This document shows, piece by piece, positions 27,688 through 46,486 of a stretch of DNA of 64,000 bases. The DNA is from Selaginella moellendorffii (lineage: Eukaryota; Plantae; Lycopodiophyta): positions 2,276,806 through 2,340,805 of the forward strand of contig NW_003314271.1 of assembly GCF_000143415.4 (NCBI RefSeq). Direction: 5' to 3'. The position numbers and the translations under genes were made by a program. How positions within the stretch are numbered: the first letter of the stretch is position 1; every line of letters begins with the position of its first letter. The notes under the pieces are model-generated. The model was not told the origin of the DNA. It was given only the letters and a program-made list of their open reading frames with translations, and did not search any database.

Positions 27688-29113
27688 CTACGTTCTCTTC
27701 CAGAGTCTTTGGAGCACTCGCATCTGCGACCTCTGGCTGGAGATTTGCTGCGAGAGATCCTCGATGGGGCGGACGTGGGCGATCTGGAACTCGCTCTCCA
27801 GGACCCGCTTGTCCAGGCGCTGGAACTCGCCGCTCACGATCCGGTCCTCCAGACCGTAAGAGGTGATGACGATGAGAGAGCCGCCGGGCGCCAGGCACGA
27901 GGCCGCCTGGGGTATGGCGATCTTGAGCGTGTTGATCTCGTCGTTCACGGCGATTCTCAGGGCCTGGAACGTTGGCAGCGCGGGATGCTCGTCCTCGAAT
28001 CTCGGTGGCTTGGATCCAAGGTTTTGTTTCCTGCGATCTATAGAGAAGAAGAAATGGAAGAGCTTCGCAAAGTGAAGAAGAAGAAATGGAGGAGCTTGAT
28101 CTTACCGATGAAGTTGACGAGCTGGAGCGTGGTTTTGAAGGGCCCTTTCTTGAGGCGGGTCTCGGCGATGGAGTGAGAGAGCTCTTGCCAGTGTTGCTCC
28201 TCGCCGTAGTCCCGGAGTAGTCGTCCCAGCTCGCGCTCGTTCCACGAGTTGAGAATGATCTCGGCTGTCATCCGGGAGCGTCGATCGAATCGCATGTCCA
28301 GAGGGCCGTCCATGGTGTGGCTAAAGCCTCTCTCGGGAGTGTTAAGCTGGAAAAAAGAAAGCTTGCAAAGATGGTGGCATGGTTTTCTTTATTCTTTCCA
28401 CTAGCAAGAAGAGATTATGATGCAAAAGCGAAAACCAAGAATTCAAGAGCAAAATCACTTCAAATTCATCAGGAAGAAAAACGCAAGAACTCGGAAAAAG
28501 AGTCTAAGAACCAGAACAACGTAGAAGAAAAACAAACAAATCAGCCAAGAAGAAAGTGGAGACAATGGCGCATTTTAGAGCAAGAAAGGAGGAGCAAACC
28601 AGATTCATCACAAAATCCAACCATGAAACTCAAGAAGAAGAACGGTTTCCATGCTATGCATGCCATACCTGCATTGCGGAGAGACCCAACACCATCAAGA
28701 TCCCGTCCACCCCTCGCTGGAGCAAGCCCGGATCGATCTGGTTGAGCTGGAGCTTGAGACACTTAAAGTTGACACTGGCAAAGTGGAGGCGGAGGTGGGC
28801 ATTCCCCGCGGCGGCGGCTTCCAACTTGGGTCTGGCCAGCAACACCGCGTCGGGGTCTAGATCCAATCCCACAGCTTGCCGGAGCTCGGGATGGGTCCGT
28901 ATGATCTGTGGAGAAAGAAAGAGAGCGATGTTTCTTTCGATCAAAAGAGAATGGAGCCATTACCTCGAACGCGTGAGCTCCGTTTCCCAGCGTGCAATCC
29001 ACAAACGTTTCCAGGCGATTCGGCTTTAAGTGTTGGAGCACCGGATTGATCATCACTGGCGAGTAAATCGCTGCGAGGTTCCTGTACCATCGCTTGATCA
29101 TTGTCAAGGGCAT
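27688..29113 (-). CDS. Divergent RsmH/MraW (METTL15-like) rRNA m4C methyltransferase paralog with altered motifs
   Basis: FVDCTLGNGAH, GLDLDPDA, RGFSHTMDGPLDMR, YGEE, TFQALRIAVNDE. Spliceable into an open frame using the TAG acceptor near 28040. Confidence 0.85.
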
Positions 29114-29354
29114 TAGAGATTATCTCAGCACCCTCACCAGTTTATTCGATCGATTCATCGAAACATCACCTTCTTTTCTTGGATCCAGAGAGAGAGAAGT
29201 TACAATTCGATTGCTTTCTGTCTTCTTTCTAAATCACTCGACTACCTGAGAAGAAACAAGTAACGAAGTATCTCGAAAGAGAAGCTCTAAACACTATGAT
29301 CTATGTAGAGAACTAGCTTTTACCTCGACGATTCTCATCCTCGGATGGCTCGCT

Positions 29355-43156: not shown

Positions 43157-46100
43157 ATGGCGAGCCAGGTCCTGTTGGGAGCGCCAAGCTTGGCGCCGTC
43201 GGCCGCATTCCCTGCCTCCCGGCCGGGGAAGAGCCCTGCGGCATTGCGCAAGAGCGTGCTAGGGTCTCCAGCTCCGGCGCCATCGCCAGCACCAGTTCGT
43301 CTCTTCGCGAATCCGAGGTATGGAACCAGATGCTGCTCCTACAGCGCCGATAGCAGCGCCTCGAGCGGTGGTGGGGGCTTTGGAGCTGGTTCTAGCCCCG
43401 GCTATGGCGGCGGCGTGAGCAACAACAACAACATCTGGATTAATCCCAATGCCACCGAGGAGGACAAGAAGAACTTCGTCTACAGCACGGGGAGCTCTTC
43501 GATCGACAAAAGGATTGGGAAGACATGGGCGAATCCAAGCGCTGGTGGCGTAGATAGCCCCGGTGGGGGCTATGGTAGCTCTGTGGCTCCTCCTGGCGGT
43601 GGCGCTGATTATTCTGGCCAGAAAGGGGCTGCTTCTAGTGGAGAAGCTGATGCGAATGCTCTATCCGGTGGAGGATCTACTGGAAGCGGTGCTGCTTCTG
43701 GTGGACTTGGTGGTGCTCCTGCTACTACTTTCGATGCGGCTGCTTCTCCGGCTACTCCATCGACCACTGGTTATACTGGAGGCGCTGGTGCTCCTGCGGG
43801 TGGCTATGGTGTGAGCTCGTCGACGGGCTATGGCGGTGGCTATGGCGCGAGTGGAGCTTCTTCTACTGGCTATGGAGCTGGAACGTCCTCGACTGGTTAT
43901 GGTGCTGGAACGACGCCCTCGACTGGATATGGTGCTGGAACGACGCCCTCGACGGGGTATGGTGCTGGAACGTCCTCGACTGGCTATGGTGCGGGAACGA
44001 CGCCCTCGACGGGGTATGGTGCTGGAACGTCCTCGACTGGCTATGGTGCTGGAACGTCCTCGACTGGTTATGGTGCTGGAACGACGCCCTCGACTGGATA
44101 TGGTACTGGAACGTCCTCGACTACCGGAGGCTATAGTGGAAACCCATCAACAGGCTATAGCTCGCCTGGGTCGACCGGATACGGAACTTCTTCCGCGTCC
44201 ACCGGCTATGGAAGCTTTGGCGGAACGTCCCCGGCATCGACTGGCTATGGGACTGGCACAACCCCGAGCTCCACGACCGGTTATGGATCGTCGACTGGTT
44301 TTGGAGACGCGTCCACTGGCTACGGTGGAGGAAACTCATCCACCTCGACTGGCTATGGTCAAAACTCTTCGACGGGCTTTGGTGATGGTCAAAACTCTTC
44401 GGGAAGTTCTACCAGTTCTGGCACGGGTTACGGTGGAGCTGGTTCCTCGACTGGATATGGAAGCTCGGGAAATTCTTGGGCTGGAAATGCTTCAACCGGA
44501 TATGGTGGAAGCTCGTCAGCAGGGAGTACCTTCGGTGGGGGCTACGGTGGGAACTCCTCGACTGGAAGCGGATTTGGCGGCTCCACAAATTTTGGAGAAA
44601 GTTCTTCGACTGGAAGCGGCTTTGGTGGCTCCACTGGTTTCGGTGGGACTTCTTCGGGTGGCTTTGGTGACAATTCTTCAACTGGAAGTGGCTTTGGCGG
44701 TGGTTTCGGTGGAAACTCTTCGACGGGCTTTGGTGGGAGCTCAACCGGCTATGGTAGCTCCAACGGCTTTGGCGGGAGCTCCTTTGGTGGCGGAAGCTCA
44801 TTCGGCAGGAGCTCGCCTGGCTTCACGCCCAGATACCACAGCAACCCGACGACGCCCAACGCAAGCACTGACTTTGGGTGGAGGAAGGGGATGAGCACCG
44901 CTCCAACGCCGCCACCCCCGCCGCCATCCACAGAGCCGGACAGCTCCACAACGCCATTCTCGGCTACAAGTTTCCTCGGGGGAAATCCTGGAGCTTCCTC
45001 GCCCGGATACGGGACCACGCCTAGCTCTTCGTATCCGGGAGGCTCCACAGGAGGCTCGTTTGGCTCCACAGCGACGGGAGGCTACCAAGGAAACTCTACG
45101 GGCTTTGGGTCCTCGACGAGTGGCGGCTACCAAACGAGCAGCTCTCCAGACTTTGGATCCTCGACAACGCCGTCGTGGAACAGCGCACCATCTTCGAGTC
45201 CGAGCACGGGGTGGAACAGTGCACCGTCTTCGAACCCAAGCACGGCGTGGAACAGTGCACCATCTTCAAGTCCGAGCACGGGGTGGAACAGTGCACCTTC
45301 TTCGAGCCCAAGCACGGCGTGGAACAGTGCACCATCTTCCAGCCCGAGCACGGAGTGGAACAGCGCACCATCTTCGAGCCCGAGCACGGGATATGGGAGT
45401 GAGAGCGCTGCTTCAACTAGCTCGCAGGCGGCAGCCCCTGGAGCGGCTCCAAGTTTTGATTCAGGTATATAGTCTTTGAGTATGGTTTGGTTTCTAAGAT
45501 TGAATACAATGTTGTTGACGCTGGTAATCGCAGCAGAGAGTTCTGGATCTAGTGCGGGACTGTCAGTTTCCGCGAGTGGCTCTGGTGTTGAAGCGGCAGC
45601 TTCAGTAGGATCTAGTAGTTCGTCAGCTGGCGAGCCGACGCTGGTAGCATCATCGTCAACTTCGCCAGCTTTAACGGGATCATCACCATCAACACCGGCT
45701 TCTGGAGAATCCACACTAGCGTCGTCGTTGTCTGGATCGTCTACTCCAATTGCTTCGACTGGATCAAGCACGCCAGGCCAAACTTCGAGCTTGTCCCCTC
45801 AGACTGTATCAAGCTCGGCTCTACCTGGCACTGGAACTGGATATGGCACGAGCTACTTGGGTGGAGACGTCGGCACGCCTGCGAGTTCTTATGGCTTTGG
45901 CGCTCCACCACCACCACCAAGCTCTCAGACGCCACCAAATCCTTCTCCATCGCCATCGCCATCGCCAGCAAATCCTTACGCGTCTTCCTCTTCTCCTCCC
46001 CCGTCGTCGCAATCTCCAGCAACCAGGAGCTCTTTTGCTGGTTCATCCAGAGGAGGAGGAGCTGCTGCTGGAAACAGGATCAACAAGGGACCAATGCCCG

Positions 46101-46486
46101 AGTTCAAGCTTCCAGACGGCACGAACAAGTGGACGTCGGTGGATGAGATGAGGCGGCACTACTTCCCAAACTGCGATAACGAGCCGCCGCCACGCAGGAC
46201 ATACAAGACCCCCGACCCCAGCGCGGGTGGATTCGTCATCCCCGACGGCTCCAGGAAGTGGAACTCGATCGACGAGATGCGGCGGCACTACTTCCCAAAC
46301 GAGGATTTCTCCACGCCGCCAAAGAGAACGTACAAGGCCCCGGATCCAAAGGCTGGCGGCTTTGTTCTTCCCGACGGCTCTCGCAAGTGGAACTCGATTG
46401 ACGAGATGAGGAGGCACTACTTCCCGGACGAGGACTTCTCCAAGCCTCCCAAGCCCTTTGGTTCCACGGGAAAGAGTGACAAGTGA
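43157..46486 (+). CDS. ~1,090-aa Gly/Ser/Thr/Tyr low-complexity protein B with plastid transit-like N-terminus and three repeat classes
   Basis: 771-aa and 336-aa ORFs are joined in frame by an intron at 45465-~45532. STGYG repeats, 6x WNSAPSSxPST, 3x PDG..KW.S.DEMRRHYFP. Confidence 0.8.

What the first reader, a model, noticed from the sequence alone, without database searches (positions are those of the whole stretch)
27688..46486. Candidate organellar RNA-condensate/ribosome-biogenesis module: three G/S/Y low-complexity proteins sharing short motifs, clustered with two RsmH paralogs and a DEAD-box helicase
Seen in sequence: within ~19 kb lie protein A (30883-29355), the tail of an RH3-like helicase (37233-38549) and protein B (43157-46486). 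All have targeting-like N-termini and hundreds of residues of [G/S]Y[G/S]-type low complexity. They are linked pairwise by non-repetitive motifs. RAGKTWPNPNA (A) matches RIGKTWANPSA (B). IDDMRKKYFGEDW (A) matches IDEMRRHYFPDEDF (B, three variants). [16 protein letters not shown] (helicase) matches NPTTPNASTDFGWRKG (B). Established: RsmH methylates SSU rRNA; RH3-type helicases act in plastid rRNA maturation and splicing; GYG/SYG tracts drive phase separation in FUS-type proteins; Selaginella organelles have extreme C-to-U editing. Inference: these may be a lineage-specific family of scaffold proteins that co-condense with the helicase in organellar RNA granules/nucleoids.
Basis: partly seen in the sequence, partly recalled or inferred. 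Interest (0 to 1): 0.85.

Follow-up and report, generated by a model that had tools for sequence, protein, structure and literature searches.

The report
Helicase tail and two disordered paralogues
In the spikemoss Selaginella moellendorffii, a chloroplast-type RNA helicase with a long glycine/serine/tyrosine tail lies near two disordered proteins that share short, selectively conserved motifs with it or with each other; this is a real lineage-restricted gene family, but its proposed role in an organelle RNA-granule module with RsmH is untested and the clustering looks like local duplication.

Summary
The window is S. moellendorffii scaffold GL377575.1. Protein A (488 aa), the helicase tail (438 aa) and protein B (1086 aa) sit at the stated coordinates.

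Beyond composition:
- Helicase–B 16-residue motif: z=18.5 against shuffles; blastp E=3e-7.
- A–B "GKTW.NP.A" motif: z=5–8.
- A–B C-terminal motif: E=7e-4.
- A and the helicase share nothing.

Evidence that these are working genes:
- B is transcribed and spliced exactly as modelled, in runs from three studies.
- RNA-contig variants in B give pN/pS of about 0.27.
- Old internal duplicates keep their protein sequence while silent sites are near saturation (pS 0.67, pN 0.08).
- The helicase–B motif is a conserved 48-nt island in unalignable flanks.
- Helicase tail and B also share a 27-nt coding repeat and colinear blocks, so B's core is a paralogue of the tail.

Not supported:
- The "module". Unrelated genes, a tRNA and open frames without family matches lie between the members, and RsmH is linked by position only.
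- Organelle targeting and condensation. Neither could be tested here.

No relatives turned up outside this species, but the searches were weak on low-complexity sequence. The public annotation fuses helicase and B into a 2244-aa product, probably wrongly.

The scan noted this same stretch three times before; no other DNA was involved.

The parts
27688..29113 (-). RsmH/MraW paralogue 1 (annotated product 330 aa); positional neighbour only
   Evidence: PF01795 hits; gene call in GCA_000143415.2. An assembly gap of 100 N lies at 27549-27648, just downstream.
29355..30883 (-). Protein A, 488 aa: basic N-terminus without acidic residues, G/S/P/N low complexity with PP[YF]G units, KTW motif and C-terminal helix motif; intron 29548-29609
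   Evidence: Gene model is identical in span and length to the public call; no Pfam family; composition.
29651..29683 (-). A motif RAGKTWPNPNA, matching B's RIGKTWANPSA
   Evidence: Shuffle test z=5.4-8.5, 0 of 200; located.
29358..29396 (-). A C-terminal motif IDDMRKKYFGEDW, on a predicted helix
   Evidence: blastp A-B E=7e-4; AF2 helix at residues 50-59 of the last 63 aa, pLDDT about 70.
30964..32298 (-). RsmH/MraW paralogue 2 (annotated product 390 aa, longer N-terminus); positional neighbour only
   Evidence: PF01795; 74-78% DNA identity to paralogue 1 in short blocks.
34994..38549 (+). RH3-like DEAD-box helicase, about 1060 aa over 9 exons: cTP-like N-terminus, DEAD, Helicase_C, GUCT-like exons, G/S/Y tail
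   Evidence: PF00270 and PF00271; weak GUCT hit; nearest solved relatives are Hera, CshA, DeaD and DDX21; exon ends and splice sites. The junction of exons 2 and 3 is not resolved.
37233..38549 (+). Helicase tail exon, 438 aa: G30 S23 Y10 percent, 28 [GS]Y[GS], begins with an RGG-like stretch
   Evidence: Translation; composition; 27-nt SSTGYGGTS coding repeat.
37959..38006 (+). Helicase motif [16 protein letters not shown]
   Evidence: 48 nt, 87.5% identical to B 44843-44890, flanks unalignable, most differences at third codon positions; pS 0.41, pN 0.07.
42985..43059 (-). tRNA-Arg(ACG) gene between helicase and B
   Evidence: ARAGORN; RNA contigs here carry foreign flanks on both sides.
43157..46486 (+). 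Protein B, 1086 aa: cTP-like N-terminus, two W.NP.A motifs, a tail-like [14 protein letters not shown] region, the 16-aa motif, a Pro run, six WNSAPSSSPST repeats, a Ser/Pro-rich stretch and three C-terminal repeats; intron 45465-45533
   Evidence: Model; spliced joint 45464|45534 in contigs of X5, X9 and X11; zero depth at 42400-42852; adapter-joined 5' end at 43136; pN/pS 0.27 from 21 coding variants.
43511..43543 (+). B motif RIGKTWANPSA; a second W.NP.A lies at 43436-43453
44843..44890 (+). B motif NPTTPNASTDFGWRKG
46070..46483 (+). Three tandem C-terminal repeats of about 43 aa (PDG[ST].KW.S[IV]DEMRRHYFP...), each predicted as a beta-hairpin plus an 8-residue helix
   Evidence: coordinates; AF2 model, pLDDT 57 overall and 60-75 on the units; R2 against R3 pS 0.67, pN 0.08; Pfam DUF6890 matches only profile positions 1-10 of 44.

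Best explanation
A, B and the helicase tail are a lineage-restricted set of nuclear genes for intrinsically disordered proteins, probably organelle-targeted, that arose by local duplication. Shown: B's central region (STGYG repeats, then GNSSTGFGG repeats, then the 16-aa motif, then a Pro-rich stretch) is colinear with the tail of the neighbouring RH3-like helicase and derived from a common ancestor with it. A and B share a KTW.NP.A motif and a C-terminal helix-forming motif, present once in A and three times in B. B is transcribed from its own start and spliced. The short motifs and B as a whole evolve under purifying selection, while the low-complexity spacers drift. Inferred: the motifs are short linear binding sites set in sticker-and-spacer (aromatic residues in G/S) disordered chains. 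B therefore probably binds the same partner(s) as the helicase tail and joins the same plastid RNA-protein assemblies, as a multivalent co-scaffold or a competitor of the tail. A may be a counterpart with a different N-terminal signal. The two RsmH genes and the overall clustering are incidental: tandem or local duplication in a gene-dense genome.
For: Motif significance. Conserved 48-nt island with mostly third-position changes in unalignable flanks. Shared 27-nt repeat unit and three colinear blastn blocks. Selection: B repeats R2/R3 pS 0.67 and pN 0.08; helicase-B motif pS 0.41 and pN 0.07; 12 synonymous against 9 non-synonymous variants in RNA contigs, pN/pS 0.27, and the three variants inside the C-terminal repeats are all synonymous. 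Expression: the predicted intron is removed in contigs from three studies, two allele-like forms are seen at 43339-43395, and there is no depth upstream of the gene. FUS-like composition with few charged residues, at most 3-4% acidic or basic in any segment. Transit-peptide-like N-termini. RH3-type helicase architecture. Precedent: RH3 in Arabidopsis plastid stress granules (PMC7674640); CP29A prion-like-domain condensates in chloroplasts (PMC13170208).
Against: No localisation, interaction or phase-separation data exist. Transcription of A, and of the tail exon joined to the helicase, could not be tested because the read tools were capped. No orthologue from another species was found, so conservation rests on paralogue comparisons and within-species variants with small counts. 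A has no direct link to the helicase and a different repeat vocabulary. B and A carry SP/SPPP-type stretches that also occur in secreted hydroxyproline-rich glycoproteins. Motif function is unknown; no Pfam, PDB or Atlas relative was found.
Confidence: 0.45

Rival explanations
1. Neutral by-products: expanding coding minisatellites and local duplications with no specific function. The motif matches would be leftovers of recent duplication or of gene conversion.
For: Repeat arrays with 27-36-nt units. Scrambled B fragments are scattered at 48019-48333 and 49566-49736 and on another scaffold, which shows that this DNA duplicates readily. No relatives were found elsewhere.
Against: Synonymous sites between duplicates are near saturation while the protein is kept. 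pN/pS is 0.27. The motif is an island of identity with third-position changes and unalignable flanks, unlike a conversion tract. B is expressed and correctly spliced. The truly neutral copies are scrambled and frame-broken.
Confidence: 0.1
2. A and/or B are secreted structural proteins (glycine-rich or hydroxyproline-rich wall proteins). The likeness to the helicase tail would reflect only shared ancestry of a repeat cassette.
For: Gly-rich repeats with Tyr/Phe, SP/SPSPSP/PPPPPP stretches and many N-x-S/T sites in A and B. A's N-terminus (basic start, then a short hydrophobic run) is ambiguous.
Against: B's first 64 residues have no acidic residue, are rich in Ser/Ala/Pro and have no clear hydrophobic core, which is typical of a chloroplast transit peptide rather than a signal peptide (judged by eye, no predictor run). 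A selected motif shared with a plastid-type helicase tail is hard to explain for a wall protein.
Confidence: 0.15
3. Helicase and B are one gene, as in the public annotation (a 2244-aa product starting at 34994), so the 'shared motif' would be an internal repeat of a single giant protein.
For: The gene call in GCA_000143415.2 starts at the helicase ATG, runs past window 43873 and has a 2244-aa product, close to the sum of the two.
Against: The tail frame ends in a stop at 38547-38549. A tRNA-Arg gene on the opposite strand and about 4.4 kb with only unassigned open frames lie between them. RNA depth is zero at 42400-42852. No joint enters B from upstream. One contig ends at 43136 directly against adapter sequence, 21 nt before B's ATG.
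Confidence: 0.05
4. A co-regulated functional gene cluster: RsmH x2, A, helicase and B acting together in organellar ribosome biogenesis.
For: RsmH (CMAL in Arabidopsis, PMC7102989) and RH3 (PMC5442247) both act on plastid ribosome biogenesis, and all lie within 19 kb.
Against: Unrelated genes are interspersed: PLAT, phytocyanin-like, a 124-aa ORF and a tRNA. RsmH has no sequence link to the others. The genes lie on both strands. The genome is gene-dense, with nine protein-coding calls plus a tRNA in the span. From general knowledge, Selaginella has a very large complement of organellar RNA factors, so chance adjacency is not rare.
Confidence: 0.05

Closest known systems
Chloroplast DEAD-box helicase RH3 (Arabidopsis and maize)
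   Same: DEAD and Helicase_C core closest to Hera, CshA and DDX21, GUCT-like exons, a transit-peptide-like N-terminus and a Gly-rich C-terminal extension. RH3 acts in group II intron splicing and 50S biogenesis (PMC5442247) and was found in plastid stress granules (PMC7674640).
   Different: The tail here is 438 aa of G/S/Y(T/N) with 28 [GS]Y[GS] and an embedded conserved 16-aa motif. From memory, angiosperm RH3 tails are much shorter and Arg/Gly-rich; this was not checked here. Orthology was not tested by a tree.
FUS/hnRNP-type prion-like low-complexity domains and the disordered tails of DEAD-box ATPases (Ddx4, LAF-1, Ded1, Dhh1)
   Same: Aromatic 'stickers' at 12-13% in G/S spacers with very few charges, attached to a DEAD-box core.
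   Different: Presumed organellar targeting, Thr/Asn-rich rather than Gln-rich, and a stand-alone paralogue (B) of the tail. No phase-separation data.
CP29A prion-like-domain condensates and plastid stress granules
   Same: Chloroplast RNA-protein assemblies built on prion-like domains; the scaffold of plastid stress granules is still unknown and RH3 is a client (PMC13170208, PMC7674640).
   Different: A and B have no RRM or any other recognisable RNA-binding domain. No homology to CP29A was seen or tested.
EPYC1-type plastid linker proteins (Chlamydomonas pyrenoid)
   Same: By analogy only: transit peptide, a disordered chain and tandem repeats each holding a short helix that could act as a multivalent binding site. 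B has three units of about 43 aa, each with a predicted 8-residue helix.
   Different: No sequence relation. Selaginella has no pyrenoid (general knowledge). The partner is unknown.
Plant glycine-rich and hydroxyproline-rich wall proteins
   Same: Gly/Tyr repeats and SP/PPP stretches.
   Different: No evident signal peptide in B, and a shared selected motif with a plastid-type helicase.

Membership tests
RH3-type (Hera/DDX21-like, GUCT-bearing) DEAD-box helicase | DEAD/DEAH box domain (PF00270) and Helicase_C (PF00271) | tested here: met
   E=1.7e-30 and E=2e-21 on separate exons.
RH3-type (Hera/DDX21-like, GUCT-bearing) DEAD-box helicase | GUCT domain after the core | tested here: inconclusive
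   Only a 32-aa exon could be scanned by reference: PF08152 at 15.3 bits against a cut-off of 27, matching profile positions 60-88. The preceding 43-aa exon gave no hit.
RH3-type (Hera/DDX21-like, GUCT-bearing) DEAD-box helicase | Closest relatives are Hera, CshA, DeaD and DDX21 rather than eIF4A or DDX3 | tested here: met
   Hera 7e-42, CshA 4e-34, DeaD 7e-32, DDX21 8e-31, against eIF4A about 1e-26.
RH3-type (Hera/DDX21-like, GUCT-bearing) DEAD-box helicase | Plastid localisation, and orthology to AtRH3 by phylogeny | not tested
   Only N-terminal composition is available: no acidic residue in the first 79 aa.
FUS-like prion-like low-complexity domain | G/S-rich, regularly spaced Tyr/Phe, few charged residues, many [GS]Y[GS] | tested here: met
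   Tail: G30 S23 Y10 percent with 28 motifs. B 195-560: G33 S23 T16 Y7 F4 percent; B as a whole has 32 [GS]Y[GS]. A only partly fits: 9 motifs against 14 PP[YF].
FUS-like prion-like low-complexity domain | Phase separation or fibril formation | not testable with these tools
   Needs purified protein.
RsmH/MraW 16S rRNA m4C methyltransferase | Methyltransf_5 (PF01795) domain | tested here: met
   Both flanking genes. Activity and localisation were not tested.
Pfam DUF6890 | Match along the 44-position profile | tested here: not met
   Only profile positions 1-10 align, to EMRRHYFP in each of B's three repeats. The summed score is 27.8 bits, single repeats score 12 bits, and A gives no hit.
Functional gene cluster or module | Contiguous, functionally related, co-oriented genes | tested here: not met
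   PLAT, a 124-aa ORF, Cu_bind_like, tRNA-Arg and about 4.4 kb with only unassigned open frames are interspersed, and the genes lie on both strands.
Secreted glycine-rich or hydroxyproline-rich wall proteins | Cleavable N-terminal signal peptide | not testable with these tools
   No SignalP or TargetP available. By eye, B lacks a hydrophobic core and A is ambiguous.

The most novel reading that the evidence does not exclude
B is a stand-alone, plastid-targeted paralogue of the RH3-like helicase's disordered tail. It keeps the same selected 16-residue docking motif and adds three helix-bearing repeats. It would then act as a multivalent co-scaffold, or as a tail mimic that titrates the helicase's partner, in chloroplast RNA granules of a plant with extreme organellar RNA editing. 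A, which shares B's end motifs but has a different presequence, would be the mitochondrial counterpart. That would give a genetically defined scaffold-and-client pair for organellar RNA condensates.
Probability: 0.18. Interest if true: 0.7.

Novelty: new variant of a known kind. Interest (0 to 1): 0.4.

Why it matters
Disordered tails on DEAD-box helicases and prion-like domains in chloroplast RNA-binding proteins are known. The scaffolds of plastid RNA granules are not known. A helicase whose tail has a free-standing, expressed and selectively constrained paralogue sharing one precise short motif offers a simple handle: pull down with the 16-mer, or delete the motif, to find what such tails bind inside organelles. 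It also corrects the public annotation, where helicase and B are merged into one 2244-aa product and B's own identity is hidden. As it stands this is a lineage-restricted family of unknown function, so the value is moderate.

Tried and rejected
- **DUF6890.** Only a 10-position partial match; rejected as a family assignment.
- **HMMER scan of 1.84 billion representatives with B's C-terminal 152 aa.** Three hits are beta-propeller-type repeats (GGVLLPDGRVFCVP...) from unrelated proteins that share only a P/D/G hairpin. They were judged spurious. The fourth, P0002, is a scrambled B fragment inside another annotated gene.
- **Word-indexed searches with B's motif region, B's C-terminus and A's exon 1.** All were blank except for P0002. 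One search did not even return A, which is annotated in that collection. These blanks therefore say little for low-complexity queries or for 16-aa motifs.
- **ESM Atlas feature search.** No usable hit.
- **Test that B is 'helicase minus core'.** The N-termini of the helicase and B show no significant similarity. A against B at the N-terminus is borderline (7 of 500 shuffles) and was not used.
- **Direct motif between A and the helicase.** None found.
- **Loose-end sequences of RNA contigs near B's start.** None occurs elsewhere in the window. They flank a multi-copy tRNA, not an upstream exon.
- **W[RK]xx[LIVA] Rubisco-binding motif of algal pyrenoid proteins.** I considered from memory that GWRKG resembles it. 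It fits poorly in B and there is no pyrenoid here; not pursued.
- **Fold search.** Not run, because both AF2 models have pLDDT below 60.
- **Asakura et al. 2012 on RH3.** Not held in the library.

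
Full report
**Where this is**

Two proteins translated from the window are found, residue for residue, on scaffold GL377575.1 of Selaginella moellendorffii assembly GCA_000143415.2. 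The window is therefore nuclear DNA of that lycophyte.

The public gene calls around the finding are, in window coordinates:
- RsmH-like, 27688-29113 (-), 330 aa
- a 488-aa product without Pfam hits, 29355-30883 (-)
- RsmH-like, 30964-32298 (-), 390 aa
- a PLAT/ATS3 protein, 32495-33252 (+)
- a 124-aa ORF, 33499-33873 (+)
- a Cu_bind_like (phytocyanin-type) protein, 34088-34684 (+)
- one call that starts at 34994 and runs beyond 43873, with a 2244-aa product

**Check of the observation**

- **Protein A.** The model has exon 1 at 30883-29610, a 62-nt GT..AG intron and exon 2 at 29547-29355, giving 488 aa. It equals the public call in span and length.
- **Helicase.**
  - It has nine exons from 34994.
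  - DEAD and Helicase_C domains are clear. A 32-aa exon gives a sub-threshold GUCT hit.
  - The nearest solved relatives are Hera, CshA, DeaD and DDX21.
  - The last intron (GTAAGT ... CAG, 37180-37232) joins the GUCT-like exon in frame to 37233-38549. This exon encodes 438 aa of G/S/Y-rich sequence ending in a stop.
- **Protein B.** Exon 1 is 43157-45464, the intron is 69 nt, and exon 2 is 45534-46486, giving 1086 aa.
- **Composition.** The tail is G30 S23 Y10 percent. B residues 195-560 are G33 S23 T16 Y7 F4 percent. A residues 45-400 are G29 S24 P14 N11 percent.
- **Repeat vocabulary.** [GS]Y[GS] occurs 28, 32 and 9 times in the tail, B and A. A mostly uses PP[YF]G units instead (14 of them), so its vocabulary differs from the other two.
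- **N-termini.** None has an acidic residue before position 42 (A), 65 (B) or 80 (helicase). All are rich in Ser/Thr and basic residues. That fits transit peptides, but no predictor was available.

**Are the motif matches more than chance?**

- With composition-based statistics, blastp finds only two things:
  - helicase tail against B: 75% identity over 20 aa around NPTTPNA[GS]TD[YF]GWRKG, E=2.6e-7
  - A against B at the C-terminus: 39% over 49 aa, E=7e-4
  - Between A and the tail it finds nothing.
- An information-weighted identity test against 200 shuffles gives z=18.5 for the helicase-B motif. It gives z=5.4-8.5 for R[AI]GKTW[PA]NP[NS]A, and z=0.5 for the best A-helicase window.
- B is therefore the hub, and A is linked to the helicase only through B.

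**Nature of the helicase-B relation**

- At DNA level the 16-codon motif is a 48-nt island of 87.5% identity. Most differences fall at third codon positions, and the flanks cannot be aligned. For the motif, pS is 0.41 and pN is 0.07.
- That pattern points to selection on the peptide. It does not fit a recent copy, a conversion tract or an RNA-level element.
- Tail and B also share a 27-nt coding repeat unit: SSTGYGGTS-type, 3 copies in the tail and about 9 in B.
- Three blastn blocks occur in the same order in both genes: STGYG repeats, GNSSTGFGG repeats, then the motif. A Pro-rich stretch follows the motif in both.
- B's central 350-400 residues are therefore a paralogue of the helicase tail. 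The N-termini are not detectably related, so B is not simply the helicase with its core deleted.

**Nature of the A-B relation**

- Both proteins have KTW.NP.A. It sits near the N-terminus in B, where a second W.NP.A lies nearby, and near the C-terminus in A.
- Both end with AGG..., a hairpin-like stretch, then [ST]ID[DE]MR[RK].YF..ED[FW]. B holds three such units with a 43-aa period.
- AlphaFold without an alignment gives low overall confidence (pLDDT 57 and 54). It places an 8-10-residue helix on the DEMRRHYF/DDMRKKYF core in all four units, and a hairpin before it in B's three.
- Between B's repeats 2 and 3, pS is 0.67 and pN is 0.08. That indicates an old duplication with the protein sequence held.

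**Expression**

- Twenty public runs hold B, 18 of them holding half or more of its sampled words.
- Contigs from four runs of four studies were laid on 42400-46900. They cover the coding region from about 43136 to about 46557.
- Depth is zero at 42400-42852.
- In three of the four runs (X5, X9, X11) the contigs skip exactly 45465-45533 (GT..AG). These runs therefore contain spliced RNA, and B's model is right.
- One run also shows an acceptor 3 nt further on. Another keeps the intron.
- One contig ends at 43136 directly against adapter sequence, 21 nt before the ATG.
- Twenty-one coding differences between the contigs and the window split 12 synonymous to 9 non-synonymous, giving pN/pS of 0.27. 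The three differences inside the C-terminal repeats are all synonymous.

**Helicase and B: one gene or two?**

The public 2244-aa call implies a fusion. Several observations speak against it:
- the stop at 38547-38549
- a tRNA-Arg(ACG) gene on the other strand at 42985-43059
- about 4.4 kb between them holding only open frames without Pfam matches
- no RNA depth upstream of B and no joint entering B

The short RNA pieces at 42981-43066 carry foreign flanks that occur nowhere in the window, as expected for a multi-copy tRNA. I read the fusion as an annotation artefact. It also explains why length-limited protein searches could not retrieve B.

**Relatives elsewhere**

- A full HMMER scan of 1.84 billion representatives with B's last 152 aa found three unrelated beta-propeller-type repeat proteins and one S. 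moellendorffii protein, P0002 (SELMODRAFT_419806).
- P0002's 3' end is a scrambled, frame-broken set of B fragments, 88-90% identical in DNA, lying within the span of an RRP12-like gene call on scaffold GL377609.1.
- More degenerate fragments (77-80% identical) lie just downstream of B at 48019-48333 and 49566-49736.
- Word-indexed searches were blank. One search failed to return even A itself. These blanks therefore show the tools' blindness to low complexity rather than true absence.
- Pfam gives only a 10-position partial match to DUF6890. The Atlas gave nothing.
- Whether other lycophytes have A or B could not be tested here.

**What it most likely is**

- *Shown:* a small, locally duplicated set of genes for disordered proteins. 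B is an expressed, constrained paralogue of the helicase tail. A and B share two further motifs.
- *Inferred:* the conserved islands are short linear binding motifs in sticker-and-spacer chains. B would then meet the same partner(s) as the helicase tail, most plausibly inside plastids.
- *Precedent:* Arabidopsis RH3 is a component of heat-induced plastid stress granules (PMC7674640). CP29A's prion-like domain drives chloroplast condensates, while the granule scaffold is still unknown (PMC13170208). RH3 itself acts in group II intron splicing and 50S biogenesis (PMC5442247).
- *Not supported:* the link to RsmH (CMAL in Arabidopsis, PMC7102989). It is positional only, with unrelated genes interspersed, both strands used, and no shared sequence feature. 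I treat it as coincidence plus tandem duplication.

**Verdict**

The family is real and under selection. The 'module' and the condensate role are untested. This is a new variant of a known kind: a DEAD-box helicase with a prion-like tail, plus a free-standing tail paralogue. Interest is moderate.

Noticed in passing
window 34994-46486 (L003 11496 onward): The public annotation of GCA_000143415.2 merges the helicase and protein B into one call with a 2244-aa product. RNA contigs, a stop codon and an intervening tRNA gene argue for two genes.
   Followed up: partly
window 37096-38577 (+): The frame one base after the G/S/Y frame is also open for 493 codons across the whole tail, and it is continuous with the GUCT-like exon. 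If the last 53-nt intron were retained, the helicase would carry a completely different V/A/L/M/T-rich tail.
   Followed up: no
window 48019-48333 and 49566-49736; L001 11390-12531: Scrambled, partly inverted fragments of B's 3' half lie 1.5-3 kb downstream of B (77-80% identity) and within the span of an RRP12-like gene call on scaffold GL377609.1 (88-90%). At the second site they are annotated as part of hypothetical protein SELMODRAFT_419806. Capture by a mobile element is possible.
   Followed up: partly
window 42985-43059 (-): A tRNA-Arg(ACG) gene lies about 100 nt upstream of B's ATG. RNA contigs covering it carry different flanks in different runs, as expected for a multi-copy tRNA gene.
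   Followed up: partly
window 45461-45534: B's intron shows an alternative acceptor 3 nt downstream in one run (X5), which would remove one codon. An intron-retaining contig appears in another run (X1).
   Followed up: no
window 45968-46043: In two runs, RNA contigs leave the window sequence at 45968 and rejoin it at 46043 with unlike letters in between. This suggests a divergent allele or an indel in B's Pro-rich stretch.
   Followed up: no
window 27549-27648: An assembly gap of 100 N lies 40 nt downstream of the stop of RsmH paralogue 1. A second gap lies at 60314-60413.
   Followed up: no
window 33499-33873 (+): An annotated 124-aa ORF with a Ser/Ala-rich N-terminus lacking acidic residues has no Pfam family. 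It may be another small organelle-targeted protein.
   Followed up: no
window 28763-29113 and 31969-32298 (-): The two RsmH paralogues differ at the N-terminus. The 390-aa copy has a presequence-like extension of about 60 aa that the 330-aa copy lacks, which hints at different compartments.
   Followed up: no
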